DNA of 64,000 nt from Chrysemys picta bellii. Its lineage: Eukaryota. Location: positions 1,488,001 to 1,552,000 of the forward strand of contig NC_088810.1 of NCBI RefSeq assembly GCF_011386835.1, written 5' to 3'. Below, one piece after another: positions 1,952 through 61,554 of this stretch. Every line of letters begins with the position of its first letter. Positions within the stretch are counted from its first letter, which is position 1. Below the pieces are notes generated by a model. It did no database searches. It saw only the letters and a list, made by a program, of their open reading frames with translations, and was not told the origin of the DNA. The position numbers were made by a program, and so were the translations under genes.

Positions 1952-4355
1952 TGGCGCCCATCTGGGACACCATAGGCTGTGTGTCTAATTCATCTCCCCC
2001 TGCCCAATCCCAGGACTCCAGCCAGCCCCCCCCCCCCTCCACTGGATGTGCCCCTGGCCCAGGATATGCCCTGGGAGATAGCGGCTAGGGGTGGCCCTGG
2101 GTGAGCCGCTTGGGGGAGGGGGGGCAGGGGAGGCTGGATGGGACCGTGGGGCGAGACATGGGGCCAAGGCCACACATCTGGGGCAGAGCTTCCAGCGACT
2201 GAGCCACCCACTGCTGACCCCTCAGCTTGTCACTGTTCCGCTGGCTGCCCACCCCATGGCCAAGGCGCCCTCTGGGCTGCCCCATGCCCCCAAAGGGAGG
2301 AGGGACTGAGGGGGCTGGGGCCTAGGGCTTGTCGCTCTGTGGGACTCATGTAGGGCCCGGGCCCTACAGGAAGCCCTTGGTCCTATATAGCACTTCAGGG
2401 CCGAGGCCCCCCTGCACTATAGCCCCAGTGCAAGGGCAGGGCCTGTGGGTGCAGTGACCAAGTCGTGAAACCCTCCCTCACGGTTACAGAGGGGCCTGGG
2501 GCCCGTCCGCACACAGTCTGGGAGCATCACAGCCCTGGGGCTGCAGCTCCAGAGAGATGGGGGTGGGAGAAGCTGGAGTCACAGCCCAGAGGCCCCCCGG
2601 CTTGTGGGGGGACAGTTTCAGCCCCATGGGCTGCGCGAAGCAGCAGAAGCAATGAGACCAAACCTGGGATCGGTACAAGGTCAAGAACAGAAAAGAAACC
2701 GCCCCGAGAGTTTTTCTTTAGGGGGTAGAAGGTGGGTCAACTGGAGGGGCACCAGCTAAGCTGGTGGAGCAGGGCTGGGATTGAGGGGCACCCACAGGGG
2801 GTGGGGGGCAAGGCTGGGCCTCATGGAACATTTTGATTGGCTGCAGTTGAGATGGTAGGGGGGGAAGAGCAGTTTGTGACAGGAAGTGAAGCTGCGTCCT
2901 GGACCATCCCCATTCCTCAGCATCCCAGGCCATTGTCTCAACACACAGATCAGCTGAGTGGGGTCCTGGTGCCCTGGCCCGTGTCACCGCCACTGCCCCG
3001 CTGTGGGGCAGGAGTTCTCGCTGCATCCCAGCCCCCCACGCTGCAGCCAGCCCCCCTTCCTCTGATTTTGAAATCAGGCTTTGCAGTTCCTACGCGTCCC
3101 CAGCAGCTGAAGGCAGAGCCTTTCCCATTCCCCCAACCCTGGGGCTACATGCCCATGGCTCCTTGTAGCCTTCCCCTGCCCTGCAGCCAGCCCCGCCTGG
3201 CTCCAGCCCGCCCCAGGAGACAGACACCCTGTCCTGTGCTCAGCTTCCATCTCTTTATTGTTTCCATATGAAAAAATAGGACCGTCTCCTCCCCCCAGTG
3301 CCCCCGCACGGCCCCGCAGCCTGGTATGGGAGCCCGGCTCTCCTCAACACCCCACATCTCCTCCCTTCCACTCCACACTGCCCCCAAAAACTTCCTTCCC
3401 ATGGCTGCCCAGCTCCGCCCCGAAGCAGTGAAGATGCACGCCCCCTTGGGGAGCAGGCAAGTGCCCCTGGCAGCGGGTCTGGGACCCCTACAGCACTGGG
3501 CAGTTATACTGGTACAACCGGGCTTATAGTGGCTGTAGGGGTAGACTGGTGTAACGGCCCTTCGTATTGGATTAAGTGCCTCTGTGCCAGGGGCTGCACT
3601 GGGATAACTCTAACAGGGTGAAAGTCACCCCAGCGCTGACACAGTTTACCGGGACAAGCTCTGGGTCCAGCTCCGCTCGGGAAGTCAGAGAGATCCCGCC
3701 ACACTGCAGGGTAACGGGGACCAGACACGGGCTCCGGAAAGCTCCCCCCTGCCCCCAACACAGAAAGGTCCTCTCCCGCCAGGACTCCAGCCTCCACCCG
3801 GGCTAGAGAGTGATGGTCGGTGCCGTGGAGGGCTCGGTGCTTGGCTGCAGGGGAGGCGCAAGGCGTTTATGGGAGGAAGAGCAGGGTGTGGAGAGAGATG
3901 CTGTGGGGTGCGTGTCGCAGACGGACACGGACACAGGGGGATGGGGGGGCGTGTTTCAGATGGCAGCCCCCTGAGACGGCCAGCCCTCCTGCCCTGGGAC
4001 CGGATAGGAGCCCGTGCTCCCTAGAGGGGACAGGCCCGGTGCCCATTCGCCGTCCCCCTGAGCTAGCCAATCCCCCACCTTGGGGCTGGATGGGAGCTGG
4101 CACCCTCTAGAGGGGAAAGGCCCCATGTCCTGCTCCATCCAATCCGCTCAGTTCCGTCAATGTCCTTCCAGTCCCATTCTAGCTCGACTTCCTGCCAGGT
4201 GGCGCCTGCTGTCCCAGCTCCCAGAGCTGATTGGAGTGGGCTTGGTGGCAGAAGAGGGGGCATCCTGCTGCAGTCCCAGCTCTCCCCACTGGGGCTGGAG
4301 GGGGCGCTAGAGCTCCTGGGGCGGCACCAGAGCCCTCAGGCCGCGGCGTGGGGCG

Positions 4356-5404
4356 CTAGAGCTCGCCACGGGCATGCCGGATGTAGTGTTCGTGCAGGCC
4401 GGCCTCCTGGGTGAAGCTCTCGCCGCACTCCGTGCAGGAGTAGGGGCGGGAGGGCAGCAGCTCCAGGGGGCGCTGGTGGGAGGCCTGGTTGGCGGCGCAG
4501 GTTGGAGAGTTGGCGGAAGCTCTTGCCGCAGTCGGGGCACTGGTGGGGCAGGCTGCGGCCGGCGGCGTGGCCCAGCCGGTGGCGCTGGTAGTTGGCCAGC
4601 TGGCCGAAGCGGCGGCCGCAGTCAGAGCACTCGAAGGCGGGGCGCAGGCAGTCGGGGCAGTCGGGGGGCGGGGCGGGGGCGTGCCCACGCTGGTGGCAGA
4701 TGAGGGCGCGGGAACTCTCGAAGGGCTTGCTGCAGATGAAGCAGACGAAGAGGGCGTCGCGCAGATTCTCCTGCACAAAGTCCTCGGGGTGCTCCCGCTT
4801 CATGTGCCGCTCCTTGAACTTCTCGTCCGGGAAGGTGATCAGGCAGTGGAAGCACTGGTTGGAACCCAGGCGATCTGGGGGGGCGAGGGAGAGCTCAAGG
4901 CTCCAGCCTTGGCTGACCCCCACCCCGAACTCCATGCCCAGCCTGGGCTCCCCACGCCACCCGCCTCCCCCCGCCGCCGGGATCCCTAACTCCTTCTGAG
5001 CTGCATACCCCGGTGGTGGGGAGGGGGAACGGGGCTGCCCTCCCCGAGGGAAGGGCTGGGAGTCCTGGCATTGCGGGGATCTGGAAGGCAGGGTGCAGTT
5101 CCCCATGGGAAGGGCCAGGAGCCCCAGTGCTATGGCGTTTAAAGCCCTAGAGAACAGACACAGGAAATGGCAGTGACCACCTCCGGTACTTACAGACAGG
5201 GCTGTTGCTGGAAGAGGCCTTGACCTTCCCCTCGGGGCTGGGCCGGGCGGGTTCATCCTCGATGCAGATCGGCTCCAGGTCGGAGCTGGGGCACCGTGTC
5301 CGGGCCGGGGTAGCCTCCTGCTTGGCAGGGAGCGCAGGCCGCGCTGGGATCTCCTGCGGGAGCGGTTCAGCCAGGGGCTGCTTCTCGGCTGTGACTTCAG
5401 ACAT
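4356..5404 (-). CDS. ZNF576: ZNF576 (coding exons 5404-5194 and 4874-4356; five C2H2 fingers if a 1-bp insertion at 4489/4490 is removed)
   Basis: CFHCLITFPDEKFKERHMKREHPEDFV...LFVCFICSKPFESSRALICHQRGH and terminal CTECGESFTQEAGLHEHYIRHARGEL* match recalled human ZNF576. The GTAAGT donor (5193) and CAG acceptor (4876/5) are phase-1 compatible. Total 730 nt = 3n+1. Likely non-coding exon 1 ends at 6217 (GTGAG). AATAAA on - at 3254-3259. Confidence 0.9.
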
Positions 5405-7849: not shown

Positions 7850-10567
7850 CTACTCCTTGGCATGGGCTTGGTGCAGCATCCGCTCTGCGTCCTCCGTCAT
7901 CTCTGCCAGGGCCTGTGTCAGCAGCCTGTAGGTGGCCTCCAGGGAGATCTCAGGCTGCCCCTCGGCCCCGCGGCCCCAGTAGGGCACAAAGTTCCACATT
8001 CGGGAGGAGAAGGGCGCTGGCTTAGTGATCTGCTTCAGCACCTGCTCCGGGTCCAGCCGCTTGACCCAGGGGCTCCGGATCTCGGCCTGGAGCAGCCCGG
8101 CCGGCTTCCCTGTGGCTTTGGCCACCTGGGCCAAGGACTCCTCGTCCAGGCCCAGCTCGATGGAGAAAGCCGAGATTGTGTCGACGAGGCTGGTGGCCAC
8201 ATCCGGGCCAGGTTTCTCTGCGTAGTACAGGCAGGTATTCAGGGTCTTGCCCCAGACGTCCTTCATCAGCGCCTTGCTCTTCCTCCTCACCAGGCGGCTC
8301 AAGGCCACGGGGATGGCCTTCTCCAGTGCCTCCCTCTTCAAGGCTGGGGCATCGCTCTCCAGGGCCGCCCGGAGGGCCGGCAGGTCGTAGGCCTCGCGGA
8401 GAAGGCTGGAGACGAGGAAGACCCTGGGGGAGCCCACGCCGTCCTTCTGGAGGGCATCCACACAGCTGCTCCGGATCTCCTCCAAGGGGCCGGGCTCGGG
8501 GCCGGGCTCAGAGCCGGGCTGGGCGTCCACATCCACCTTGGTCCTGATGAAGAAGAACCGCTTCCCGGCCGCGCTGATGGCCCGGGCGAGCTGGCTCTGG
8601 GCGTGGCGGTAGCGCTCCGAGGCCGTCAGCAGGAAGAAGTCGTAACGGGACAGATCCAGCCGCCCCACGTCCTCCTCCGTTACCCCCACTCCCGGCAAGT
8701 CCCACAGATACAGGCCAGGCACGGTGGGGTGGGCGTAAGCTGTGGCTTTCCGGGTGGTGGCCATCACCCCCGTGGGTGCTGCCTCTGGCTCCCCGCAGCC
8801 CACCCCCCTCAGAGCGTTCACCAGCGCCGACTTGCCCGAGCCAGCCTCCCCCAGCACTGCCACGTCCAGCCGGATCTGCGAGGGCTCCTCCAGCGCCGAG
8901 CGGATGATGGCAGGCACCCCTGCCAGTCCCCCCGTGGCACAGGCCTGGTACAGCTCTTGGGTCTTCCTCGTGTTCACAGCCCTCAGGTCGTCCAGCTCCC
9001 CGTCCTGGGCCCTGCACAGAGAGGACGGGACGGGGGGATTGGAGCCCCTCTGCTGAGCTTTGGGTAGAGAGGAAGCTTGTACCTGGTGTCACTGGAACCC
9101 AGGACACTTGGGGTCTGGTCCCAGCTCAGCCACAGACACCCTGTGAGTCACTGCCTCTCTCTGGGCCTCAGTTTCCCCACCTGTATGTAGGAGAAGGAGC
9201 CTTCTTTTGTCTATGCAGAATGGAAGCTCCACCTCTTAGAGGATGTGGGGCAGGGACTGGGGCTTGGGCGGGGTCTATGCAGCGCCCCATAGCGGAGCCC
9301 CTGTTCTCGAGCGGGGTCTATGCAGCGCCCGGCACAATGCAGCACTTAGTGTGATGGGGCCCCGCAATACCCAGTGGGGAAGTTTCACTGCAGTTTCTGT
9401 TAAAAAGCTGATTTTTCAAAGTGCTGTAAAATTTCCCCCACTCCCCTCCCAGAGCCAGAACCCAGGAGTCCTGGCTCCCGGCCCACCTGCTCTGACCCAC
9501 TAGACCCCACTCCCCTCCCAGAGCTGGGGAGAGAACCCAGGAGTCCTGGCTCCCGGCCCCCCTGCTCTGACCCGCTAGACCCCACTCCCCTCCCAAAGCT
9601 GGGGAGAGAACCCGGGAGTCCTGGCTCCCGGCCCCCCTGCTCTGACCCGCTAGACCCCACTCCCCTCCCAGAGCTGGGGAGAGAACCCGGGAGTCCTGGC
9701 TCCTGGCCCCCCCTGCTCTGACCTGCTAGACCCCACTCCGCTCCCAGAGCTGGGGAGAGAACCCAGGAGTCCTGGCTCCCGGCCCCCCTGCTCTGACCCG
9801 CTAGACCCCACTCCCCTCCCAGAGCTGGGGAGAGAACCCAGGAGTCCTGGCTCCTAGCCCCGCTCCACTCACCTCTTCAGCTGGATTAGCTCCTCCTCCA
9901 GTTTGTCCTGGAACTGGCTGAACTGGTACCTGTCCGTCTCCAGGGCCGAGACCAGGAAAACCCTGTTGGGCTCCAGCCTGTTCTTGGCCAGCACCTCGGC
10001 CACCCCGTTCCGGGCCAGCGCCAGCGCCTCGGCCGAGCTGTACCGGGCCTGGAACCGCCGCTTGGCCGTGTGCAAGTCCAGGTCCACCTTGGTGCGCACC
10101 ACGTAGTAGGGCTTCCGCTTCTGCTGGAAGGCCTTGAGGAGCTGCAGGTGGGGATCTGCCGGGCTTCCCTCGGCCACCACCAGCACCAGGCAGGTGAACT
10201 TCCCCAGGTCCCCCAGCCGCTTCGTGTAGTCGCCCGGCTTCTCCGGCTCCTGGAAGCCCGGGAGATCCCACAGTGCCAGGTTGGGGTAGGTGGGGTGGGT
10301 GTAGCCGGCCGGCTGCCCCGGGGGTTCCGGCGCCTGCTGGAAGAAGGCCTGGGCGTTGTCCAGGCCGGGGCGTTCTCCCACGAGGGCGTGGATCAGCGTG
10401 GTGACCCCGGCGGCCCGGCGGCCCACCACAGCCACGTCGACCTTCAGGGTGTTGACCGAATCCACCAGGGCCTGGAGGCGGGCGGCGGCCGTGACGGGGT
10501 CGTGGGCTTCGTAGCGGGTCCGCAGCTCCCGGAGGAAAGCGTCATCCAAGCCCACCGGGGCTGCCAT
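7850..10567 (-). CDS. Tandem double-domain immunity-related GTPase (IRGQ/IRGC family), 618 aa; coding exons 10567-9873 and 9011-7850
   Basis: GCCATGG start after an acceptor at 10578/7. The donor AG|GTGAGT (9872) and acceptor TGCAG|G (9013/2) join in phase 2 (Arg); 695+1162 = 1857 nt. Domain 1 motifs: GRRAAGVT, LWDLPG, TKVD. Domain 2 motifs: GEAGSGKS, TGVMATT, LWDLPG, TKVD. AATAAA on - at 7507-7512. Confidence 0.88.
9110..9190 (+). mobile_element. CORE-SINE (MIR-like) fragment
   Basis: The segment ctctctgggcctcagtttccccacctgta is the CORE-SINE hallmark. Similar cores occur near 29950, 35140, 42395, 46040 and 49655. Confidence 0.6.
9440..9860 (-). repeat. Array of ~74-bp tRNA/SINE-head-like repeat in the IRG intron
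   Basis: About 5-6 units of ggagccaggactcctgggttctctccccagctctgggaggggagtggggtctag...gagcag on the - strand. Confidence 0.9.
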
Positions 10568-10981
10568 GGCCCACCGCTGCGAGGGGAAGAAAGCTGGAGT
10601 CAGGACTCCTGGGTTCTCTCCCCGGCTCGGGGAGGGGAGTGTGGGCTGGTGGTTAGAGACGGGGCCAGGACGCCTGGGTTCTCTGGGGGAGACGGGGGGT
10701 CAGGACGCCTGGGTTCTCAGGGGAAGGGGGGAGACAGGACCCCTGGGTTCTGGGGGGGTGATGGTGGTTGGGGGGGGACCAGGACGCCTGGGTTCTTGGG
10801 GGGGGGGGGGGGCTGGGAGCCAGGACGCCTGGGTTCTCTGGGGGAGACGGGGGGGTCAGGACGCCTGGGTTCTCAGGGGAAGGGGGGAGACAGGACCCCT
10901 GGGTTCTGGGGGGGTGATGGTGGTTGAGGGGGGGGACACCAGGACGCCTGGGTTCTCGGGGGGGGGGGTCCAGCCGCTCAC

Positions 10982-11126
10982 CCGCAGTGGGTCCCTCCCG
11001 GCCGATGGCTCCAGGCCCAGTGACAGCGGGGCCGGGAAATAGAAACCGACGCGGCGGCTCCTCCCCGCGGGGGCCGGGCCGGGCCGGGCCGGAGGGGGAG
11101 GAACCGGGAGAGACGCCGGCGGAGCC
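10982..11126. promoter_or_regulatory. Bidirectional GC/CpG-rich promoter and first exons of the two IRG genes, with an ISRE at 11034-11047
   Basis: Outward-facing donors: GTGAGC on - (10981) and GTGAGT on + (11127). GGGAAATAGAAACC fits the ISRE/IRF consensus GAAANNGAAAC. Confidence 0.75.
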
Positions 11127-11900: not shown

Positions 11901-12102
11901 GTACCCCCAATGTACCCCCCTCGGTTTATCTGTCCCTGTGCACATCTCTCCATCTGGTTCAGGAGGGGGCTGGGGTATTGGGATGGGCTGGGATCAGGGC
12001 GGGGTGGGGCAGGGGCAGGAGGGGGTGGGGGCAGGAGGCAGACCCCCGGAGCCACGCCCCCCCCCCGACAATCACTTCTCTTTCTGTCTCCGCAGCACCC
12101 AG

Positions 12103-14492
12103 ATGAACGAAGCCCCAGACCCCGAAATGCCCCCGCAGCCCCCGGTGGACACCTCGCCGGGCTCCCCGGACCGGGGCGACGTCTCGGTGGTGATCGTGGG
12201 GGCGCCGGGCTGCGGCAAGTCGGCCCTGCTCAACGCCGCGCGGGGCCTGGTGGAGGACGACGCCCGCGCGGCCCCGCTGGGGGCCCCGGCGAGCTCCGGG
12301 GGGCCCGTGCTGTACCCCGACCCGGCCCGGCCCAACCTGCTGCTCTGGGAGCTGCCCCTGACAGAGGGCGAGGGGCCGGAGCGCTGGCTGGCCGAGGGGG
12401 ACGTGGTGCTCCTGGCCACCGACGGGCTATTCGGTGCCAGCCATGCCCGCCTGGCCCAGGAGGCCCGCGGCGCCGGCAAGACGGTGCATTTCGCCCGCAC
12501 CAAGGCTGACCTGGACCTGCACACCCTCCGGCGGCTCCTGGGAGAGCGCTACGACCGGGCCCAGGCCCTCGACGCCCTCCGGGCCGCCTGCACCCAGTCC
12601 CTGGTGGCCCATGGCCTCGGGGAGCCCCTGCCTGTCGTCTTCCTCGTCTCCGGCCACGAGCCCCGAGAGCTGGACGGTCCCCTGCTGCGCCAGGCTCTGG
12701 TGGGAGACGTCAGGATGTACGAGAGGTGCGGCTTGTTTATTGTAGGGTCTCTCAGGTGGGCCGCTGTTGTGGGGATGCTCGGGAGAGGTAGGGCTGGTTT
12801 GTTATTGTGGGGTTTCTTAGGGAGACGAGTGTGGTTGCTGCGGGCGGAAGGGCCTCAGGTGGGGTGATATTGTAGGGTCTCTTTGGAGGGCTGCATGCAG
12901 TGTTTGTTATTGTAGGGTCTTTTGGTGGGTTCATTTTATAGGGTCTCAGGTGGTTTGTTATTGTAGGGTCTCCCAGAATCCCCAACACCCAGCCTGTCCC
13001 TCCATGTCTCACCCTCACTAGTCCCCCCCACTCCTCATCCCGTGTCTCCCCTGCTCTGCCTCTCCCTACTCCCGCCCCATACTCCCCGGTCCTTTCTTAC
13101 TCTGTTCAGTCCCCCCCAGCATCTCATGTCCCCTCTACCTCCCCCCCAGTATTCCCCATTGTCTTATGCCCCCGGTGCCATCTGGCATCTCACACTTTCT
13201 GTGCGCTCCCCCCCACCGGTGACCCCCATTGTCTCACGCCCCCGTGCCCCCTGGTGCCCCCATTGTCTCACGCCCACTGTGCCCGTAGGGTGCTGCGCCC
13301 CACGCTCTCCGGATTTGAGCAGATCAGCGAGCGGGAGGTGGCCGAGATTCAGGAGGCCTACGAGCTGGGCGGCCTGGCGGAGGTGGTGACCCGGGTCCAG
13401 TGCAGCCTGGAGACCCTGTGGAACGCCCGGCTGGATGTGGCCGTCACGGGGGAGTCAGGGGCTGGCAAGTCCACCTTCGTCAACGCCCTGCGAGGCCTGA
13501 GTGACGAGGACGAGGGGGCGGCCCAGACCGGCGTGACCGAGACCACGGCCCAGCCCACGGCCTACCCCTATCCCGGCTACCCCAACGTGACGCTGTGGGA
13601 CCTGCCGGGCATCGGGACGCCCAGCTTCCGGGCCGACCGCTACCTCGAGGCCGTGAATTTCACTCGCTACGACTTCTTCATCATCCTGGCCTCGGAGAGG
13701 TTCAAGGAGAACCACGTCCGCCTGGCCCGGGCCATCGTGGAGCAAGGCAAACGCTTCTACTTCGTGCGCGCCAAGGTAGACAACGACCTGGAGGCCACGC
13801 GGAGGAGGAAGAACCCGCCCGAGGAAGAGGAAGTGCTGGAGGAGATCAGGAGGGATTGCCGGGAACGGCTGGGTCAGGCCGGGCTGGGCGACGCCAAGGT
13901 CTTCCTCCTCAGCAGCTTCGAGATGGAGAAATACGACTTCCAGGCCTTCGAGGACACCTTGGAGCGAGAGCTGCCCGGGCACAAGCGTCACGCCTTCCTC
14001 CTCTCCCTGCCCAACCTCTCGGGGGCCATCATCGAGAAGAAGCGGCAGCTGCTCCACCAGGAGGTCTGGAAGGTGGCCTTGGTCTCCAGCCTGGTGGCCG
14101 CCGTGCCCTTGCCGGGGCTGGCCTTCACCTGCGACGTCTCCATCCTGCTGAGGAAACTGGCCGCCTACCGGCAGGATTTCGGGCTGGACGCGGCCTCCCT
14201 GGCCCGGCTGGCGGAGAGGGCCGGGAAGCCGCTGGAGGTGCTGCGGGCCGAGGTGCGCAGCGTGCTCGGGCGCAGCATCAACAAGGAGGTGGTGATCGGG
14301 CTGCTGGGGAAGGCCACCGGCGGGGGCTTGGTGGTGGTCAACTTCTTCTTCCACCGGATCCCCATCTACGGGGCGCTGGCCTCCGGGGGCATCTCCTTCC
14401 ACACCACCTACTCCATGCTCAGCCAGTGCCTGGAGGAGCTGGCGGCCGACTCCCAGCGGGTTCTCGTCAAGGCCTTCGACAGCGAGGTCTAA
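12103..14492 (+). CDS. IRGQ: IRGQ orthologue, tandem double-domain IRG, 608 aa; coding exons 12103-12725 and 13289-14492
   Basis: Acceptor CGCAG at 12094/5. The donor AG|GTGCGG (12726) and acceptor CGTAG|G (13287/8) join in phase 2 (Arg); 623+1204 = 1827 nt. RGDVSVVIVGAPGCGKSALL resembles recalled human IRGQ QGDVTALFLGPPGLGKSALI, and GFEQISEREVAEIQEAYELGGL resembles GFEVLGAAELEAVREAFETGGL. Domain 2 has GESGAGKS, TGVTETT, DLPG and AKVD. Syntenic with ZNF576 and PINLYP-like genes. Confidence 0.85.
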
Positions 14493-14785: not shown

Positions 14786-16370
14786 TGCCCCAGGGCGGCG
14801 CTAGGGGGCGCTGTGCCGCAGGGAGCGGGGTGGGGGCTCTCCCCCGGTGCCCCAGGGCGGCGCTAGGGGGCGCTGTGCCGCAGGGAGGGGGGTGGGGGCT
14901 CTCCCCCGGTGCCCCAGGGCGGCGCTAGGGGGCGCTGTGCCGCAGGGAGCGGGGTGGGAGCTCTCCCCCGGTGCCCCAGGGCGGCGCTAGGGGGCGCTGT
15001 GCCGCAGGGCGCGGGGTGGGGGCTCTCCCCCGGTGCCCCAGGGCGGCGCTAGGGGGCGCTGTGCCGCAGGGAGCGGGGTGGGGGCTCTCCCCCGGTGCCC
15101 CAGGGCGGCGCTAGGGGGCGCTGTGCCGCAGGGAGGGGGGTGGGGGCTCTCCCCCGGTGCCCCAGGGCGGCGCTAGGGGGCGCTGTGCCGCAGGGCGCGG
15201 GGTGGGGGCTCTCCCCCGGTGCCCCAGGGCGGCGCTAGGGGGCGCTGTGCCGCAGGGAGGGGGGTGGGGGCTCTCCCCCGGTGCCCCAGGGCGGCGCTAG
15301 GGGGCGCTGTGCCGCAGGGCGCGGGGTGGGGGCTCTCCCCCGGTGCCCCAGGGCGGCGCTAGGGGGCGCTGTGCCGCAGGGAGGGGGGTGGGGGCTCTCC
15401 CCCGGTGCCCCAGGGCGGCGCTAGGGGGCGCTGTGCCGCAGGGAGGGGGGTGGGGGCTCTCCCCCGGTGCCCCAGGGCGGCGCTAGGGGGCGCTGTGCCG
15501 CAGGGAGCGGGGTGGGGGCTCTCCCCCGGTGCCCCAGGGCGGCGCTAGGGGGCGCTGTGCCGCAGGGCGCGGGGTGGGGGCTCTCCCCCGGTGCCCCAGG
15601 GCGGCGCTAGGGGGCGCTGTGCCGCAGGGCGCGGGGTGGGGGCTCTCCCCCGGTGCCCCAGGGCGGCGCTAGGGGGCGCTGTGCCGCAGGGAGCGGGGTG
15701 GGGGCTCTCCCCCGGTGCCCCAGGGCGGCGCTAGGGGGCGCTGTGCCGCAGGGCGCGGGGTGGGGGCTCTCCCCCGGTGCCCCAGGGCGGCGCTAGGGGG
15801 CGCTGTGCCGCAGGGCGCGGGGTGGGGGCTCTCCCCCGGTGCCCCAGGGCGGCGCTAGGGGGCGCTGTGCCGCAGGGAGGGGGGTGGGGGCTCTCCCCCG
15901 GTGCCCCAGGGCGGCGCTAGGGGGCGCTGTGCCGCAGGGCGCGGGGTGGGGGCTCTCCCCCGGTGCCCCAGGGCGGCGCTAGGGGGCGCTGTGCCGCAGG
16001 GAGGGGGGTGGGGGCTCTCCCCCGGTGCCCCAGGGCGGCGCTAGGGGGCGCTGTGCCGCAGGGAGGGGGGTGGGGGCTCTCCCCCGGTGCCCCAGGGCGG
16101 CGCTAGGGGGCGCTGTGCCGCAGGGAGCGGGGTGGGGGCTCTCCCCCGGTGCCCCAGGGCGGCGCTAGGGGGCGCTGTGCCGCAGGGAGCGGGGTGGGGG
16201 CTCTCCCCCGGTGCCCCAGGGCGGCGCTAGGGGGCGCTGTGCCGCAGGGAGCGGGGTGGGGGCTCTCCCCCGGTGCCCCAGGGCGGCGCTAGGGGGCGCT
16301 GTGCCGCAGGGAGCGGGGTGGGGGCTCTCCCCCGGTGCCCCAGGGCGGCGCTAGGGGGCGCTGTGCTGCA
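14786..16370 (+). repeat. 26 x 62-bp near-identical GC/CpG-rich tandem array with a CTCF motif in each unit
   Basis: Unit ccccagggcgGCGCTAGGGGGCGCtgtgccgcagggagcggggtgggggctctcccccggtg. First and last units start at 14788 and 16338 (1550/62 = 25 intervals). The core matches CTCF 13/14. Confidence 0.95.
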
Positions 16371-16729
16371 GGCAGTGGAGTGGGGGGCGATTCTCCTTGC
16401 AGTTCTCCCCCCACAGCCCCCGAAATCCCCGAGGTTGCTAACACAGACCCCGTCCCTGCCCTGCCCCACGGCGGCTCCGGCTCACGCAGGGATCTTGGCG
16501 TGACGCAGGCCCAAGGACAAGGCCTCTCCTGGTCCGCGGGTGGGTCTGACCTGGCTTGTGGGGCTTGGGTCCAGTCCTGTTCCCTGGCTTTTGGGGGGCA
16601 CTGGGGCAGCACTGAAATGCGGGGGGGGTTGTTCTACAGGGGGTCCCTGACGGTCCTCGAAAGGGGCAACGTGTGTGTGTGTGTGTGGGGGGGGGGGGTC
16701 CTTCCACTGCTCTGCTAAGAACGCCCGTA

Positions 16730-17934: not shown

Positions 17935-20900
17935 TTCAGCCAGGACTCCTGGGTTCTCTCTGAGCTCTGGGAGGGGAGTGGGGTCTGGTGGTTAGAGCAG
18001 GGGGGGCTGGGAGCCAGGACTCCTGGGTTCTCTCTGAGCACTGAGAGGGGAGTGGGGGCTGGTGGTTAGAGCAGGGGGGGCTGGGAGCCAGGACTCCTGG
18101 GTTCTCTCTGAGCACTGAGAGGGGAGTGGGGGCTGGTGGTTAGAGCAGGGGGGGCTGGGAGCCAGGACTCCTGGGTTCTCTCGGAGCACTGAGAGGGGAG
18201 TGGGGGCTGGTGGTTAGTGTGGGGGGTCACTGGGAGGCAGGACTCCTGGGTTCTCTCGGAGCACTGGGGGCGGGGGAGGAGGAGGAGGAGGCAGGACTCC
18301 TGGGTTCTCTCTGGCACTGGGGGGGGGGGATCATTGCGCCTCAATGAACGGACCTTCCCTCAGACTCAGGCTATTTTTAGGTTGCTCTTTCCCGGGGGGG
18401 GGGGGCGGTTCTCACACATCTGCAGCCGAATTACACCCGGCCCCACATCACCGTCCCTGCCCCACTGAGCCCCCCCAGCACTGGCCCTGAAGGCCGGGGG
18501 CAGCCCCCCACTCCGCTCCCTGCAGCCCAGGGCCCCCGAGGGGATTGACATCAAGGGCCCGATCCTGCTCTGCTTCCTGCTGGACCAGTCTGCCCAGATT
18601 CTTGGCGTCACCTGCTGCAGAGCCGCCGGGCCCCTCGCGCCTGCCACGACCGGGCGCTGCTGCGGGTTTGACGTGGCACGAGGGGTCAGGGACAGCGCGG
18701 CCCAGCAGCGGCCTCCTGCCTCTGGGTGCTCAGCCAGGCCCCGTTCCACAGCCAAGTGCCCCTGCTCTAACCACTAGATCCCACTCCCCTCCCAGAGCCG
18801 GGCAGAGAACCCAGGAGTCCTGGCTCCCAGCCCCCCCTGCTCTAACCCCCAGACCCCACTCCCCTCCCAGAGCCGAGGAGAGAACCCAGGAGTCCTGGCT
18901 TCCAGCCCCCCCCCACTCTAACCACTAGATCCCACTCCCCTCCCAGAGCCGGGGAGAGAACCCAGGAGTCCTGGCTCCCAGCCCCCTGCTCTAACCACTA
19001 GCCCCCACTCCCCTCCCAGAGCCGGGCAGAGAACCCAGGAGTCCTGGCTCCCAGTCCCCCTGCTCTAACCACTAGCCCCCACTCCCCTCCCAGAGCTGGG
19101 GAGAGAACCCAGGAGTCCTGGCTCCCAGCCCCCCTGCTCTAACCACCAGCCCCCACTCCCCTCCCAGAGCCGGGGAGAGAACCCAGGAGTCCTGGCTTCC
19201 AGCCCCCCCCCCCACTCTAACCACTAGATCCCACTCCCCTCCCAGAGCCGGGGAGAGAACCCAGGAGTCCTGGCTCCCAGCCCCCTGCTCTAACCACTAG
19301 CCCCCACTCCCCTCCCAGAGCCGGGCAGAGAACCCAGGAGTCCTGGCTCCCAGTCCCCCTGCTCTAACCACTAGCCCCCACTCCCCTCCCAGAGCCGGGG
19401 AGAGAACCCAGGAGTCCTGGCTCCCAGCCCCCCTGCTCTAACCACCAGCCCCCACACCCCTCCCAGAGCCGGGGAGAGAACCCAGGAGTCCTGGCTCCCA
19501 GCCCCCCTGCTCTAACCACCAGCCCCCACTCCCCTCCCAGAGCCGGGGAGAGAACCCAGGAGTCCTGGCTCCCAGCCCCCCTGCTCTAACCACCAGCCCC
19601 CACTCCCCTCCCAGAGCCGGGGAGAGAACCCAGGAGTCCTGGCTCCCAGCCCCCCTGCTCTAACCACCAGCCCCCACTCCCCTCCCAGAGCCGGGGAGAG
19701 AACCCAGGAGTCCTGGCTCCCAGCCCCCCCTGCTCTAACCCCCAGACCCCACTCCCCTCCCAGAGCCAAGGATAGAACCCAGGAGTCCTGGCTCCCAGCC
19801 CCCCCTGCTCTAACCCCCAGACCCTACTCCCCTCCCAGAGCCAAGGATAGAACCCAGGAGTCCTGGCTCCCAGCCCCCCCTGCTCTAACCCCCAGACCCT
19901 ACTCCCCTCCCAGAGCCAAGGAGAGAACCCAGGAGTCCTGGCTCCCAGCCCCCCTGATCTAACCCACCAGCCCCCACTCCCCTCCCAGAGCGGGGGATGG
20001 AAGCCTCCATGGCATTGGCCCAGTCTGCCAGCAGCTCCCCCACCTGCCCATGGAAGGTGCCACGGGGCAGTTATGGGCCCCACCCAGGGTTCAGCACGAA
20101 AAGGTTAAACACGCCTAGGACCCGGGTTCTGTAGCTGCCTGATATAGGATCTGGGTCTAGTGGTTAGAGCAGGGGGGCAGGGAGCCAGGACTCCTGGGTT
20201 CTCTCCCCCGCTCGGGGAGGGAGGGTAGTGGGTTGGAGTTGGAGAACTAGATGGCCAGGCCTGGAGAATGACTAAGGGGCATTGAGCTGTGGGAAGGGGG
20301 TGGGGGCTGTAGGTCGGGACTGAGGGGCACCGGCGGGGGCTGTGCTAACTCCTGTGGTACAGGCCCATCGCCCCGGGCGTCAGGCCTCTTAATCTGCGGC
20401 TTCTGGATGACGCAGTCACTGCCTCTGGAACAAATCAGCCACGCAGCGAGGGGCAGCTGGTATGTCTCCGTGCACACCTAGCGCTGGGTGCAGCCAGCGC
20501 CACCGCCCAGCCCCCCGCTCTAACCACTAGACCCACTCCCCTCCCCAAGCCAGGGAGAGAACCCAGGAGTCCTGGCTCCCAGCCCCCCCCACCCCAAACT
20601 CTAACCACTAGACCCACTCCCCTCCCCAAGCCAGGGAGAGAACCCAGCCCCCCCAACTCTAACCACTAGACCCACTCCCCTCCCCAAGCCAGGGAGAGAA
20701 CCCAGCCCCCCCAACTCTAACCACTAGACCCACTCCCCTCCCCAAGCCAGGGAGAGAACCCAGGAGTCCTGGCTCCCAGCCCCCCCCCCCAACTCTAACC
20801 ACTAGGCCCCACTCCCCTCCCCAAGCCAGGGAGAGAACCCAGGAGTCCTGGCTCCCAGCCCCCCCCACCCCAAACTCTAACCACTAGGCCCCACTCCCCT

Positions 20901-21030
20901 CCCCAAGCCAGGGAGAGAACCCAGGAGTCCTGGCTCCCAGCCCCCCCCACCCCAAACTCTAACCACTAGGCCCCACTCCCCTCCCCAAGCCAGGGAGAGA
21001 ACCCAGGAGTCCTGGCTCCCAGCCTCCCCC
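17935..21030. repeat. Several arrays of the ~74-bp tRNA/SINE-head-like repeat (17935-18320 +, 18760-19990 -, 20150-20220 +, 20510-21030 -)
   Basis: Same unit as 9440-9860; orientation switches between arrays. Confidence 0.9.
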
Positions 21031-21363
21031 AACCCCAAGACCCCACTCCTCCACTGATCTTCCCTACAAAAATACCCCCAATGCTGCGAGCTTCCCCCCA
21101 GCAGTGCCATCCGCCTCCCGGACCTGTGGCGGTCGGGTTCGATCGGGGACATTCCTGTGGTGGGGCCGGGGGATTGAATTGCACGGGACGGGATGTGGGG
21201 GGGGGAACAGGTAGAGCCGGTGCCCGGGAGTTTTCCAGCCAAGCCAAGCCCAGCCCAGCCCGGGGCCGCCCCTGGGTCTGCCGGCCCGGCCCAACCCAGC
21301 CCAGTCCTATAACAGTCCCGTGAGGCAGCGCCGGCCCCACAGCCGGCCCGAGCCTGCGACAGC

Positions 21364-24300
21364 ATGGGGGAGCTACTGGGCCTGTGCGTGCTGGCTGCGC
21401 TGCTGGGCACAGGTGAGGGGGGGCGGTGCACACCCCAGGGCACCGGTCCCCAGCCCCCAGCCCCAGGGCACCCCATACCCAGCCCCCAGCCCAGCCCCAG
21501 GGACACCCCTGTACCGGTGCACCGGACCCCAGCCCCCAGGGACACCCGTTCCCCAGCCCCAGGGCACCCCATACTCAGCCCCCAGGGCACCCTGTTCCCA
21601 GCCACAGGGACACCCCTGGACCCAGCCCACAGGACACCCCCCATTCCCCAGCCACCGGGTACCCCTGTACCCCATTCCCCAGCCCCAGGGACACCCCTGT
21701 ATCCAGCCCCCAGGGCACCCCGTCCCCAGCCCCCCAGCCCCAGGGACACCCCCATTCCCCAGCCCCAGGGCACCTGGTTCCCAGGCCTCAGGACACCCCC
21801 CATACCCAGCCCAGCCCTAGGGCACCCCTGTACCCAGCCCCCAGGACACCCCCCATTCCCCAGCCCCAGGGACACCCCTGTGCCCAGCTTCAGGGCACCC
21901 TGTACCCCTGCACCCATCCCCCAGGGACACCCCTGTACCCAGCCCCCAGGGCCCCCCTGTCCCCACTGCCAGATGGCCATAGACACTCACTACCGTATCC
22001 CTCGTCTAGCCCCATACACAAGATCTATCTAGCCCCACAGACACCTCCTCTGGCTACCTATGGAGGGAGGGGGGGAGGGGGTGGGTGGGGGGGAGGGGAT
22101 GGATCCTGTTGTCACTTCACCCAGTGAACTTTTGGTTATTTAATGTCTAATAGACCCGGCTCTGGGAGCGGAGTGGGGGCTGGTGGTTAGAGCAGGGGGT
22201 GGTAGCCAGGACTCCTGGGTTCTCTCCCCGGCTCTGGGAGGGGAGTGGGGGCTGGTGGGTTAGAGCAGGGGGGGCTGGGAGCCAGGACTCCTGGGTTCTC
22301 TCCCCGGCTCTGGAAGGGCAGTGGGGGCTGGTGGTTAGAACGGGGGGCTGGGAGCCAGGACTCCTGGGTTCTCTCCCCAGCTCTGGGAGGGGAGTGGGGG
22401 CTGGTGGGTTAGAACAGGGGAGCTGGGAGCCAGGACTCCTGGGTTCTCTCCCCGGCTCTGGGAGGGAAGTGGGGGCTGGTGGGTTAGAACAGCGGGGCTG
22501 GGAGCCAGGACTCCTGGGTTCTCTCCCCAGCTCTAGGAGGGGAATGGGGGCTGGTGGTTAGAACAGGGGCTGGGAGCCAGGACTCCTGGGTTCTCTCCCC
22601 AGCTCTGGGAGGGGAGTGGGGGCTGGTGGGTTAGAACAGGGGGGCTGGGAGCCAGGACTCCTGGGTTCTCTCCCCGGCTCTGGGAGGGGAGTGGGGGCTG
22701 GTGGGTTAGAACAGGGGGGCTGGGAGCCAGGACTCCTGGGTTCTCTCCCCAGCTCTAGGAGGGGAATGGGGGCTGGTGGTTAGAACAGGGGGTGGGAGCC
22801 AGGACTCCTGGGTTCTCTCCCCAGCTCTAGGAGGGGAATGGGGGCTGGTGGTTAGAACAGGGGGTGGGAGCCAGGACTCCTGGGTTCATTCTGGGGCCAT
22901 GGCTCCGTGAGAAGGTATGCAGCGATACAGGCTGAGCGAGTGATTCGCTCCCCTGCCTGCAGGGCCACTGTCTCCCCACGGGGGCAGGATGGAATTTTCC
23001 CCACACAGGCGGGTTGATGGGCCCATGGGGCCAGTCCGGGGGGGCAGGAGGCGGGATGCCGGGTGAGATGGGCCCGTTGGAGGGGCTCTGACTGCGCTTC
23101 CCTCCCCTGTGCCCAGGGGGCGCCATCTCCTGCTATAACTGCACCAGCTCGGAGGGCTACAACTGCACCACGAACCAGGCCACCTGCACCAGCGCCGTCA
23201 ACAGCTGCATCACCATCGCCCGCGACGAGGAGCAGGGTAGGGCCCGGCCTGTGGGGCTGGGGGAGTGGGGACAAGCAGCGCTGCGAGCTTCCCCCCAGCA
23301 GTGCCCCCTGGAGCTGCAGGCCTCCCCTGTCAGCAGTGCTCCGATGCTGTGAGCTTCCCCGCAGCAGTGTCCCCTGGAGCTGCAGGCCTTCCCTGTCAGC
23401 AGTGCCCCCCCGATGATGCGAGCTTCCCCTCAGCAGTGCCCCCCAGAGCTGCAGGCCTCCCCTGATAATGGTGCCCCCCGGCACTCCAAGTTTCCCATCA
23501 GCAGTGCCCCCTAGTGCTGCGAGCTTCCCCCCAGCAGTGCCCCCATTTGACGTTGCGCACGCTTCCCCAGCAGTCCCCCCCACCCCAGTGCTGCGAGCTT
23601 CACACTAGCAGTGCCCCCCCATGCCACAGGTAGACTGAGGGGGGTGCGGGTACAAACCCCGTGTGTGTCCTAGCCCCTTGACTGCTCCATCCCAGGGGGA
23701 TTCTCCCCACAAATCATGGCTTGCACCATCCCCGTACCCCGTGTCTCACCCCCGGTGCCCGCCCTGTCCTGCCAGGGGACGAGGACAAGGAGAAGACGGT
23801 GTACGAGAAGAAATGCAACTCGGACGACCGGCTCTGTAACCAGTTCTACGGGCTGACGGCCGGCGCCTACCGTCTGCGCTGGAACTCGACTTGCTGCCGG
23901 GCGGACAGCTGCAACGTGCCCGAGATCACCCGTAGGAGCCCCCTGGGCGGCGCCAGGACGCCTGGGTTCTCTCCTCGCTCTGGGAGGGGAGTGGGGGCTG
24001 GTGGTTAGAGCAGGGGGGGCTGGGAGTCAGGACTCCTGGGTTCCATCCCCGGCTCTGAGAGGGGAGTGGGGGCTGGTGGTTAGAGCAGGGGGCGCTGGGA
24101 GCCAGGACTCCCGGGTTCTCTCCCTGGCTCTGGGAGGGGAGTGGGGTCTAGTGGTTACAGCAGGGGGGCTGGGAGCCAGGACTCCTGGGTTCTCTCCCCG
24201 GCTCTGGGAAGGGAGTGGGGTCTAGTGGTTACAGCAGGGGGGCTGGGAGCCAGGACTCCTGGGTTCTCTCCCCGGCTCTGGGAGGGGAGTGGGGTCTAGT

Positions 24301-32879: not shown

Positions 32880-33907
32880 CCCTTGTATGTCTCCTCTTCT
32901 GTTTTACCCACATTCTGCCATATATTTCATGTCGGAGCAGTCTCAGATGATGGCCCAGCACATGTTGTTTGTTTTAAGAACACTTTCAGTGCAGATTTGA
33001 CAAAACACAGAGAAGATACCAATGTGAGATTTCTAAGGATAGCTACAGCACTCGACCCAAGGTTTAGAATCTGAAGTGCCTTCCAAAATCTGAGAGGGAC
33101 GAGGTGTGGACCATGCTTTCAGAAGTCTTAAAAGAGCAACACTCTGATGTAGAAACAACAGAGATCGAACCGCCAAAAAAGAAAATCAGCCTTCTGCTGG
33201 TGGCATCTGACTCAGATGATGAAATGAACATGTGTCAGTCTGCTCTGCTTTGTATCGTTATCAAGCAGAACCCGTCATCAGCATGGGCACATGTCCTCTG
33301 GAATGGTGGCTGGAGCATGAAGGGGCCTACGAATGTTTAGCAAATCTGGCACGTAAATACCTTGCAACGCCAGCTACAAAAGTGTCATGTGAACGCCTGT
33401 TCTCACTTTCTGGTGACATTGTAAACAAGAAGCGGGCACCATTATCTCCTGTAAATGTAAATAAACTGATTTGTCTTAGCAATTGGCTGAACAAGAAGTA
33501 GGACTGAGTGGACTTGTAGGCTCTAACGTTTACATTGTTTTGTTTTTGAGTGCAGTTAGGTAACAAAAAAAATCTCCATTTGTAAGTTGCACTTTCATGA
33601 CAAAGAGATCGCACAACGGTACTTGGATGAGGTGAATTGAAAAATACTATTTCCTTTGTTTATCATTTTTACAGTGCAAATATTTGTAATCAAAATATTA
33701 TCAAGTGAGCCCTGTACACTTCGTATTCTGTGTTGTCACTGAAATCCATCTATTTGAAAATGTAGAAAAACATCCAAAATATAAAATTAATTTCAATTGG
33801 TATTCAGTTGTTTAACAGTGCAATTCAAACGGCCATTAATTTTTGTAGTTGCGATAAATTTTTTGGAGTTAATCGCGTGAGTTAACTGCGATTAATCGAC
33901 AGCTCTA
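32880..33907 (+). mobile_element. Decayed hAT DNA transposon, 3' part (transposase dimerisation domain plus TIR)
   Basis: Fragments ATALDPRF and CPLEWW...LANLARKYLATPATKVSCERLFSLSGDIVNKKRAPLSP; terminal ttaatcgacagctcta. Confidence 0.9.
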
Positions 33908-61371: not shown

Positions 61372-61554
61372 CTAGAAAGGAATTCCTCCTGATTTCTGGC
61401 AAACAATTCCTCGTCCACTCCTTGGCCACCATTTACTGGCTCGCCAGGTCGTTTCCTGACCTCTGGGGTGGCTCAGCTCCCCTGAGCCGAGTTCTCAGGC
61501 CCCCAGGGAACCTTTTGGCTTGGCTGGCCCCCCTGCGAGTTATTTCGGGGGCAG

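What the first reader, a model, noticed from the sequence alone, without database searches (positions are those of the whole stretch)
13289..14492. IRGQ orthologue with an apparently catalytically intact second GTPase domain
Mammalian IRGQ is regarded as a 'quasi' IRG with eroded G-motifs. Here domain 1 and the linker look like IRGQ, but domain 2 keeps G1 GESGAGKS, switch I TGVTETT (with the Glu equivalent to Irga6 E106), G3 DLPG and G4 AKVD, followed by a full IRG C-terminal helical region. This may be the ancestral active state of IRGQ before pseudo-enzyme decay.
Basis: partly seen in the sequence, partly recalled or inferred. Interest (0 to 1): 0.8.

Follow-up and report, generated by a model that had tools for sequence, protein, structure and literature searches.

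The report
Turtle IRGQ gene with working-looking GTPase
This turtle gene is the counterpart of mammalian IRGQ, known only as a dead "quasi" GTPase that acts as an autophagy receptor, but here its second domain keeps every GTP-binding and catalytic motif, which looks like the ancestral state that several animal lineages later lost independently.

Summary
Window 13289-14492 is exon 2 of an expressed two-exon gene (exon 1 is 12103-12725). It encodes a 608-aa tandem IRG protein, 99% identical to a Malaclemys RefSeq model named "interferon-inducible GTPase 5-like".

- **Domain 2 (D2):** a complete IIGP unit (Pfam E 1e-100) with G1 GESGAGKS, switch I TGVTETT, G3 DLPG and G4 AKVD. It is under purifying selection (dN/dS 0.07-0.18 among turtles).
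- **Domain 1 (D1):** a truncated G domain with a P-loop and TKAD but no DxxG.
- **Orthology to IRGQ is well supported but not proven by a tree.**
  - The locus order matches the IRGQ region: an Ig gene and ZNF428-family/zinc-finger genes on one side, a Ly6/uPAR gene on the other.
  - In Swiss-Prot, only IRGQ aligns across both domains.
  - The linker and the LIR1-type motif match (FEQI versus human FEVL).
  - Crocodile, anole, newt and lungfish members of the same clade are named IRGQ or IRGQ-like.
  - No mammalian IRGQ sequence could be brought into a tree. By raw similarity, D1 is closer to canonical IRGs than to human IRGQ.
- **New here:** D2 is intact from lungfish to turtles but decayed separately in Anolis, crocodilians and Bombina, as well as in mammals.

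GTPase activity is untested.

The parts
11034..11047 (+). ISRE-like element GGGAAATAGAAACC in the roughly 560-bp region shared head-to-head with the neighbouring IRG gene
   Evidence: The core GAAANNGAAAC matches only here in the 64-kb window (0.21 expected). It is identical in Malaclemys but absent from the Carettochelys, Sceloporus and Crocodylus loci. Function is inferred only.
11097..11126 (+). 3' end of a non-coding 5' exon (its start is unknown), spliced to the acceptor at 12096
   Evidence: The 30 loose letters that precede 12096 in an RNA-type contig match 11097-11126 exactly and are followed by GT.
12096..12725 (+). First coding exon (ATG at 12103), encoding domain 1, a truncated IRG G domain (residues 1-207 plus 2 bases)
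   Evidence: ORF and splice sites; Pfam IIGP E 8.9e-22; AlphaFold model with pLDDT 84 and a G-domain fold.
12199..12222 (+). Domain 1 P-loop GAPGCGKS (intact G1)
   Evidence: GxxGxGK[ST] is kept in nearly all orthologues (Thamnophis has GKSDVGKS), including those with a decayed domain 2.
12346..12360 (+). Domain 1 WELPL in place of the G3 motif WDLPG (no DxxG)
   Evidence: Motif table: the Asp is replaced by Glu in every listed orthologue except tuatara (K), from lungfish to turtle; the Gly is absent in all of them.
12499..12510 (+). Domain 1 G4 TKAD
12726..13288 (+). Intron (563 bp, GT..AG, phase 2)
   Evidence: Skipped in contigs of 4 runs from 4 studies; confirmed by P0001.
13289..14492 (+). 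Second coding exon: linker, full IRG unit (domain 2 plus the C-terminal helical domain) and stop codon
   Evidence: Pfam IIGP E 1.2e-100; 46% identity to mammalian IRGC by Foldseek; dN/dS 0.07-0.18 among turtles.
13314..13325 (+). FEQI, an LIR-type core [F/Y]-x-x-[I/L] in the disordered inter-domain linker, at the position of human IRGQ LIR1 (FEVL, aa 186-189)
   Evidence: The linker has pLDDT below 50 at residues 208-221.
13449..13472 (+). Domain 2 G1 GESGAGKS
13527..13547 (+). Domain 2 switch I TGVTETT (Glu292 corresponds to Irga6 E106)
   Evidence: (alignment offsets).
13599..13610 (+). Domain 2 G3 DLPG
13770..13781 (+). Domain 2 G4 AKVD (a turtle-specific Thr-to-Ala change; other lineages have TK[VILM]D)

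Best explanation
The finding is exon 2 of the turtle orthologue of IRGQ. The gene is expressed and has two coding exons. Its 608-aa product has four parts. (i) An N-terminal truncated IRG G domain (D1) keeps a P-loop and TKAD but lost DxxG and the switch I Thr. It is therefore a nucleotide-binding-type pseudo-GTPase scaffold. (ii) A disordered linker carries an LIR-type FEQI motif where human IRGQ has LIR1, its GABARAPL2-binding motif. (iii) A complete, canonical GKS-class IRG GTPase unit (D2), sister to IRGC, has G1, the catalytic switch I Glu and Thr, G3 and a KxD G4. (iv) The usual IRG C-terminal helical domain follows. Shown: gene structure, expression, motif integrity, purifying selection, the position of the locus, and the phylogenetic distribution. 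Inferred: D2 binds and hydrolyses GTP in the cooperative, dimer-activated way of Irga6, and the protein couples this switch to ATG8-family binding through D1 and LIR1. The intact D2 is the ancestral state, present from lungfish to turtles. Mammals, crocodilians, anoles and the frog Bombina each lost it separately, leaving the quasi-GTPase form known from human and mouse.
For: **Gene and expression**
- ORFs, splice sites and P0001 agree.
- Spliced contigs occur in 4 studies.

**Domains**
- Pfam IIGP gives E 1e-100 for D2 and 9e-22 for D1.
- PDB hits to Irgb10, Irgb6 and Irga6 reach E 1e-78 to 1e-71. Their offsets equate K268 with Irga6 K82 and E292 with Irga6 E106.

**Selection**
- dN/dS for exon 2 is 0.07-0.18 among turtles and 0.18 turtle against Sceloporus.
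- It is 0.42-0.48 against Anolis, whose D2 is eroded.

**Synteny**
- Malaclemys and Carettochelys: zinc-finger gene, gene B, gene A, Ly6/uPAR gene.
- Sceloporus adds a ZNF428-family gene on the zinc-finger side.
- Crocodylus has an Ig-domain gene, zinc-finger genes, gene B, a gene named IRGQ and a Ly6/uPAR gene.
- Anolis 'IRGQ isoform X3' reads through into the same Ly6/uPAR gene, one exon of which lies at window 23721-24008.

**Link to IRGQ**
- In Swiss-Prot only mouse and human IRGQ align over both domains (query 25-600, 26% identity).
- The D1 profile hits the human IRGQ N-terminal domain 8q6q_C at E 2.5e-11.
- The human long exon starts RLLPPAQDGFEVLG... against turtle R|VLRPTLSGFEQIS, with the same Arg-to-Phe spacing. 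Human LIR1 is aa 186-189.

**Phylogeny**
- All gene A D2 units form one clade, sister to IRGC-like proteins.
- The D1 tree puts crocodilians with turtles (99/97) and Anolis with Sceloporus (100/97). That gives 3 separate losses among non-mammals, confirmed for D2 by leave-one-out trees.
Against: - No mammalian IRGQ sequence could be placed in a tree, so orthology rests on position, collinearity and motifs.
- D1 is more like canonical IRG G domains than human IRGQ D1. Irgb10 scores 70 bits against 26 for 8q6q_C. In the Foldseek search 8q6q_C ranks only 46th at 26% identity. Alligator D1 does not hit 8q6q_C at all.
- The shared intron position also occurs in the neighbouring gene B, so it does not discriminate between the two genes.
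- Human LIR2 (WEVL) is EEVL here, with no aromatic residue.
- With all rows included, the D2 tree joins Alligator with Anolis, and the AU test rejects separating them (p 0.004 and 0.0015). I read this as long-branch and compositional attraction, but it is a real conflict in the data.
- The turtle G4 is AKVD, not TKVD.
- No biochemical data exist.
Confidence: 0.75

Rival explanations
1. It is a separate tandem IRG paralogue, for example an IRGC-derived duplicate fused to a truncated G domain. It merely occupies the IRGQ neighbourhood, and mammalian IRGQ descends from the adjacent gene B or from a gene lost in reptiles.
For: D2 is 45-46% identical to mammalian IRGC but only 26% to IRGQ. D1 scores better against Irgb10 than against human IRGQ D1. 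Two tandem IRG genes sit between the zinc-finger and Ly6/uPAR genes, so position alone does not choose between them. The intron position is shared with gene B.
Against: Gene B begins with N-terminal helices and has an eroded D1 P-loop (GRRAAGVTT). Its junction reads KR|AQDGELDDL, with no F-x-x-[IL] motif. Gene A starts directly at the P-loop strand, as mouse IRGQ does (residue 6 aligned to query residue 25). Gene A also shares the RxLxPxxxxFExx linker and the ...PLPGL..CDV... C-terminal block with the published human and mouse sequences. Each genome examined has exactly one gene A at this place, whether intact or eroded.
Confidence: 0.1
2. It is the IRGQ orthologue, but D2 is not a working hydrolase. 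The motifs are kept because nucleotide binding stabilises the fold or acts as a static switch, or the turtle AKVD change has already weakened guanine binding.
For: The first G4 position is Ala in all four turtles, against Thr in tuatara, squamates, amphibians and lungfish. Motif conservation cannot tell binding from hydrolysis. No assay exists.
Against: The catalytic switch I Glu and Thr, G1 GKS and G3 DxxG are all kept across roughly 400 My (divergence time from general knowledge), and dN/dS is low. Septins use AKAD as their G4 and still bind and hydrolyse GTP (general knowledge of the septin family, not tested here).
Confidence: 0.2
3. It is an artefact: two independent genes or a decaying pseudogene, with the tandem protein created by gene prediction.
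For: The RefSeq model is computational.
Against: Contigs of four runs from four studies join 12725 to 13289 exactly at GT..AG. Both reading frames are open, and dN/dS is well below 1.
Confidence: 0.02

Closest known systems
Mammalian IRGQ (FKSG27; human Q8WZA9, mouse Q8VIM9; N-terminal domain solved with GABARAPL2 in PDB 8q6q)
   Same: Two IRG-type units in one chain, beginning directly at the D1 P-loop strand. An LIR-type F-E-x-[IL] motif sits in the linker, with the same spacing after the exon-junction Arg. The C-terminal helical block is conserved. The genomic neighbourhood is the same (zinc-finger and ZNF428-family genes on one side, a Ly6/uPAR PINLYP-like gene on the other). The alignment is collinear over query 25-600.
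   Different: Mammalian D2 has no G1, G3 or G4 (AGKADVGLV, WTVPLG), whereas the turtle keeps all of them. Turtle lacks the long low-complexity insert and the aromatic residue of LIR2. Identity is only 26%.
IRGC (IIGP5, 'cinema'), a conserved single-domain IRG
   Same: It is the closest sequence relative of D2 (45-46% to mammalian IRGC, 54-57% to reptile IRGC-like proteins) and the sister clade in the D2 tree. Both are GKS-class.
   Different: IRGC has one domain and no D1 or LIR linker. The gene A D2 units form their own clade, reaching back to lungfish.
Irga6, Irgb6 and Irgb10, the canonical interferon-inducible IRG GTPases with solved structures
   Same: Full-length collinear match of D2 plus the helical domain (E 1e-71 to 1e-78). 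All G motifs and the catalytic Glu are present. D1 superposes on their G domains at TM about 0.7.
   Different: Those proteins have a single domain. Gene A has no N-terminal myristoylation signal (it starts MNEAPD). Interferon induction is not shown here; only one ISRE-like site was found.
Tandem IRGs: mouse Irgb2-b1 and the zebrafish irgg-irgq1 transcript (Bekpen et al. 2005)
   Same: Two IRG units are expressed as one transcript, one competent and one modified.
   Different: In zebrafish irgg-irgq1 the N-terminal unit is the canonical one and the C-terminal unit is the quasi one. Here the order is reversed. These tandems are lineage-specific, whereas gene A is conserved across sarcopterygians.

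Membership tests
IRG / p47 GTPases (Pfam IIGP, PF05049) | Significant full-length match to the IIGP profile | tested here: met
   Exon 2 gives E 1.2e-100 and 337.7 bits (cut-off 24) over profile positions 2-372 of 375. Exon 1 gives 78.1 bits.
IRG / p47 GTPases (Pfam IIGP, PF05049) | G1 GxxxxGK[ST] (GKS class, not GMS) | tested here: met
   D2 has GESGAGKS at 13449-13472 and D1 has GAPGCGKS.
IRG / p47 GTPases (Pfam IIGP, PF05049) | Switch I with the catalytic Glu (Irga6 E106) and Thr, and G3 DxxG | tested here: met
   D2 has TGVTETT and DLPG, aligned to ETT and DLPG of Irgb10 and Irgb6. The offset to Irga6 places E292 at position 106. D1 lacks both (WELPL).
IRG / p47 GTPases (Pfam IIGP, PF05049) | G4 [N/T]KxD | tested here: inconclusive
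   Turtles have AKVD: the Lys and Asp are kept but the first position is Ala. Other lineages have TKxD.
IRG / p47 GTPases (Pfam IIGP, PF05049) | GTP binding and cooperative hydrolysis | not testable with these tools
   Needs recombinant protein.
IRGQ orthologous group (by descent) | Conserved genomic position between the zinc-finger/ZNF428 genes and the PINLYP-like Ly6/uPAR gene | tested here: met
   Shown. The human gene order is from my own knowledge and was not checked with a tool.
IRGQ orthologous group (by descent) | Two-unit architecture collinear with mammalian IRGQ, with LIR1 in the linker | tested here: met
   Foldseek aligns query 25-600 with mouse IRGQ 6-576. FEQI corresponds to human FEVL at aa 186-189.
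IRGQ orthologous group (by descent) | Clusters with mammalian IRGQ in a phylogeny, or reciprocal best hit | not tested
   No mammalian IRGQ sequence could be obtained as an id. Crocodile, anole, newt and lungfish proteins named IRGQ or IRGQ-like do fall in the clade.
IRGQ orthologous group (by descent) | Second LIR (human WEVL, aa 421-424) | tested here: not met
   The turtle has EEVL at the homologous helix start, with no aromatic residue.
'Quasi-GTPase' as defined by Bekpen et al. 2005 (IRG homologue with a radically modified nucleotide-binding site) | Loss of canonical G motifs in the IRG-homologous long exon | tested here: not met
   All motifs are present in exon 2. So this gene is IRGQ by descent but not a quasi-GTPase by the functional definition.

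The most novel reading that the evidence does not exclude
IRGQ began as a true GTP-hydrolysing tandem IRG, with an ATG8-binding module (D1 pocket plus LIR1) attached to a canonical IRG switch. That enzyme still operates in turtles, tuatara, most lizards and snakes, salamanders, caecilians and lungfish. The catalytic site was then discarded at least four times independently (mammals, crocodilians, anoles, Bombina), while D1, the linker and the helical domain were kept. This gives natural replicate experiments on how an immune GTPase becomes a pseudoenzyme autophagy receptor.
Probability: 0.5. Interest if true: 0.72.

Novelty: new variant of a known kind. Interest (0 to 1): 0.6.

Why it matters
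IRGQ was long an orphan "quasi" GTPase. It has recently been shown to be an autophagy receptor and initiation hub that controls MHC class I quality control and tumour immune evasion (PMC13172515 and the work it cites). How a member of an interferon-effector GTPase family acquired that role is unknown.

A motif-complete orthologue under purifying selection would allow three things:
- It gives an enzymatically testable ancestral-type form.
- It shows that D1 and the LIR1-type motif (the LC3-interacting region) predate the loss of catalysis.
- It offers several independent decays (anoles against Sceloporus, crocodilians against turtles, Bombina against newt) for comparison. These could show which features are needed once the GTPase is gone.

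It also corrects the annotation: turtle and squamate models named "interferon-inducible GTPase 5-like" belong to the IRGQ lineage.

Tried and rejected
**Attempts to obtain mammalian IRGQ**
- The word-indexed search with domain 1 found only reptile orthologues and Anolis IRGQ.
- The same search with a profile of the eroded orthologues also found only those.
- The exhaustive HMMER search with D1 returned no recognisable mammalian IRGQ among the best 150. Twenty of these were named through.
- The Bekpen 2005 supplement prints the human and mouse long exons. I compared those by eye only and did not paste them into any tool.

**PDB and structure searches**
- PDB search with the linker alone gave no hit.
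- Alligator D1 did not hit 8q6q_C.
- The D1-only model did not pick IRGQ as nearest structure.

**Synteny and context**
- Look-up of Anolis carolinensis P0122 found no contig.
- Pfam on ten long ORFs elsewhere in the window found only one C2H2 zinc-finger ORF. The ORF at 713-1351 has no ZNF428 hit. No XRCC1- or CADM4-like exon was recognised in the window by a composition screen.
- GAS sites (TTCNNNGAA) are not enriched, and none lies near the promoter.

**Rejected readings**
- The Alligator+Anolis clade in the D2 tree is not evidence for an old eroded paralogue. It dissolves when either row is left out, and D1 contradicts it.

**Not attempted**
Full report
**What is at the coordinates.** The window is GC-rich vertebrate DNA. 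The interval 13289-14492 begins right after an AG acceptor (13287-13288) and ends with the stop codon of a 412-codon ORF. Upstream, an ORF with ATG at 12103 runs to a GT donor at 12726. Joining 12725 to 13289 (a phase-2 intron of 563 bp) gives a 608-aa protein reading ...VGDVRMYER|VLRPTLSGFEQ.... This differs at only 7 residues from P0001, a Malaclemys terrapin RefSeq protein named "interferon-inducible GTPase 5-like". The window is therefore from a related emydid turtle.

Contigs from four sequencing runs in four different studies carry exactly this junction with the intron removed. One of them continues upstream of an acceptor at 12096 into a non-coding exon that ends at 11126. The gene is real, spliced as predicted, and transcribed.

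**The motifs.** Pfam IIGP matches exon 2 at E 1.2e-100 over nearly the whole profile, and exon 1 at E 8.9e-22 over the G-domain part only.

Domain 2 (D2) carries:
- G1 GESGAGKS (13449-13472)
- switch I TGVTETT (13527-13547)
- G3 DLPG (13599-13610)
- G4 AKVD (13770-13781)

D2 aligns without gaps through the G1-to-G3 stretch to the solved IRG GTPases Irgb10 and Irgb6 (E 1e-78 and 1e-73; Irga6 hits at 1e-72). The Irga6 hit begins at query residue 231 against chain residue 45. It assumes no indel in that stretch, which the printed Irgb10 and Irgb6 alignments support.

The one departure from the canonical set is the first G4 position. It is Ala in all four turtles and Thr in every other lineage with an intact D2. 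Septins use AKAD as their G4, so this need not abolish guanine binding. That point is general knowledge and was not tested here.

Domain 1 (D1) keeps GAPGCGKS and TKAD. It has WELPL where G3 should be and no switch I Thr, and these D1 features are shared by nearly all orthologues.

AlphaFold models give a confident G-domain fold for D1 (pLDDT 84). They also show two G domains plus a long helical domain in the full protein, with a disordered linker at residues 208-221.

**Constraint.** Exon 2 has dN/dS of 0.07 against Malaclemys, 0.17 against Carettochelys and 0.18 against Sceloporus. Exon 1 has 0.24-0.31. This is a gene under purifying selection, strongest on D2.

**Is it IRGQ?** Five lines of evidence say yes.

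1. *Position.*
   - Malaclemys and Carettochelys have the order zinc-finger gene, a second tandem IRG on the opposite strand (gene B), this gene (gene A), then a Ly6/uPAR gene.
   - Sceloporus has the same order with a ZNF428-family gene beyond the zinc finger.
   - Crocodylus porosus has an Ig-domain gene, zinc-finger genes, gene B, a gene that NCBI names IRGQ, and a Ly6/uPAR gene.
   - From my own knowledge, human IRGQ lies between PINLYP (a Ly6/uPAR gene) and ZNF576/ZNF428/CADM4. I could not check that with a tool.
   - The window itself has the zinc-finger ORF (4336-5256), gene B, gene A, and a Ly6/uPAR exon at 23721-24008. That exon matches the C-terminal part of the Anolis read-through model "IRGQ isoform X3".
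2. *Architecture.* In a Foldseek search of Swiss-Prot models, only mouse and human IRGQ align across both domains (query 25-600 against mouse 6-576, 26% identity). Every other IRG matches D2 alone.
3. *Linker.* Bekpen et al. print the human and mouse long exon, which starts RLLPPAQDGFEVLGAAELEAVREAFETGGLEA.... The turtle exon starts (R)VLRPTLSGFEQISEREVAEIQEAYELGGLAE.... The Arg-to-Phe spacing is the same. The turtle has FEQI where human LIR1 (FEVL, aa 186-189, the GABARAPL2-selective motif) lies. The F/Y-x-x-I/L motif is conserved in almost all orthologues.
4. *Profile hit.* A profile of D1 hits the crystal-structure sequence of the human IRGQ N-terminal domain at E 2.5e-11.
5. *Names in the clade.* Proteins in the same clade are already named IRGQ (Crocodylus, Anolis isoform X3) or IRGQ-like (Lissotriton, Protopterus).

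**Points against, or not discriminating.**
- D1 resembles canonical IRG G domains more than human IRGQ D1: 70 against 26 bits, and TM about 0.7 against rank 46.
- D2 is 45-46% identical to mammalian IRGC.
- The intron position is shared by gene B.

The first two are what a very long mammalian branch would produce, but I could not show that. None of my three word-indexed searches, nor the exhaustive HMMER search, returned a mammalian IRGQ that could go into a tree. Gene B is a poor alternative candidate. It starts with N-terminal helices, its D1 P-loop is eroded, and its junction reads KR|AQDGELDDL without the motif. I put orthology of gene A with IRGQ at about 0.85.

**A wider pattern.** D2 motifs across orthologues:

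| D2 state | Lineages |
|---|---|
| Intact | Lungfish, caecilian, newt, tuatara, thirteen squamates including Sceloporus and Pogona, and four turtles (G1 is TGESGAGKST in nearly all; lungfish, newt, caecilian and Python vary inside the motif but keep GxxxxGKS) |
| Eroded | Anolis (two species), Alligator and Crocodylus, and the frog Bombina |

Mammals are also eroded (AGKADVGLV, WTVPLG). Each examined genome has a single gene A at this locus, whether intact or eroded.

- All D2 units form one clade, sister to IRGC-like proteins and distinct from gene B.
- In the D2 tree Alligator and Anolis join each other, and an AU test rejects separating them (p 0.004 and 0.0015). Both rows are long and compositionally deviant.
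- With either row left out, Anolis goes to Sceloporus (96/93) and Alligator goes to the turtles (96/69).
- The D1 tree, where neither is decayed, gives crocodilians with turtles (99/97) and Anolis with Sceloporus (100/97). It disfavours joining them (p-AU 0.027) and needs three changes of state.
- dN/dS against Anolis rises to 0.42-0.48.

The simplest reading is an intact ancestral D2 with separate losses in anoles, crocodilians, Bombina and mammals.

**Mechanism.** Shown: an expressed, constrained protein with a pseudo-GTPase D1, an LIR-type linker motif, and a motif-complete IRG unit. Inferred: D2 binds GTP (about 0.75) and hydrolyses it (about 0.65), through the head-to-head G-domain dimer that uses the switch I Glu, as in Irga6. 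D1 and the linker form an ATG8-family docking module as in human IRGQ. Human LIR2 is not present (EEVL instead of WEVL). A single ISRE-like site (GGGAAATAGAAACC, 11034-11047) lies in the bidirectional promoter region. It is the only match in 64 kb, but it is conserved only in Malaclemys. Interferon control is therefore only a lead.

**Novelty and score.** The gene model exists in RefSeq under an IRGC-like name. I found no paper in the searchable library that describes non-mammalian IRGQ orthologues or their intact GTPase site. This is a known family and a known gene lineage in an undescribed, apparently catalytic state, with repeated decay. I rate it a new variant of a known kind, with interest 0.6. 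The main gaps are the missing mammalian tree and the absence of any biochemistry.

Noticed in passing
window 7850-10567 (- strand): exon 1 at 10567..9873, exon 2 at 9011..7850: A second two-exon tandem IRG gene (gene B, 618 aa) lies head-to-head with the finding. Its pattern is the opposite in D1: the D1 P-loop is eroded (GRRAAGVTT) but D1 keeps DLPG and TKVD. Its D2 is fully intact (GEAGSGKS, DLPG, TKVD). Orthologues exist in Elgaria, tuatara, newt (RefSeq accession adjacent to the IRGQ-like gene) and lungfish. It forms its own clade outside IRGC plus gene A.
   Followed up: partly
window 11034-11047: The only ISRE-core match in the 64-kb window (GGGAAATAGAAACC) lies in the roughly 560-bp interval between the gene B start codon and the gene A 5' exon donor. 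It is identical in Malaclemys but absent from the Carettochelys, Sceloporus and Crocodylus loci.
   Followed up: partly
window 12096, and contig record 15 of run X2: A 4296-nt RNA-type contig carries 2265 nt upstream of the 12096 acceptor, far more than a short 5' UTR. It may merge gene B and gene A transcripts through overlapping 5' ends, or it may reflect a long or alternative 5' exon.
   Followed up: no
window 14786-16386: A near-perfect 62-bp tandem array (25.8 copies, 98% matches) starts about 300 bp after the gene A stop codon. RNA-type contigs reach into its first copies.
   Followed up: no
window 10664-10968, 17938-18266, 18755-19997, 20592-21038, 22155-22887: Arrays of a 74-82-bp GC-rich unit (…CAGGA[CG][GT]CCTGGGTTCTCT…) in both orientations surround the IRG genes and generate many spurious long ORFs. 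It looks like a lineage-specific satellite or SINE-derived repeat.
   Followed up: no
window 23721-24008 and 35896-36135 (+): Cysteine-rich Ly6/uPAR-type exons, PINLYP- or PLA2-inhibitor-like, lie downstream of gene A. The first matches the C-terminal part of the Anolis 'IRGQ isoform X3' read-through model. Carettochelys has two such genes.
   Followed up: partly
P0280 (Anolis carolinensis), at the position of human IRGQ LIR2: In A. carolinensis, whose D2 is decayed, an acidic run is followed by W-E-G-L (…EEEEEERALWEGL). This is an LIR-type core at the same place as mammalian DETWEVL, so it may be convergent. A. sagrei has ALLAGL there instead.
   Followed up: no
window 57150-64000 and about 33000-33500: There are reverse-transcriptase fragments of CR1-type LINEs and an ORF fragment resembling a hAT-type transposase (assigned from the translated ORFs by eye, not tested). 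No further cellular genes were recognised in 24-64 kb.
   Followed up: no
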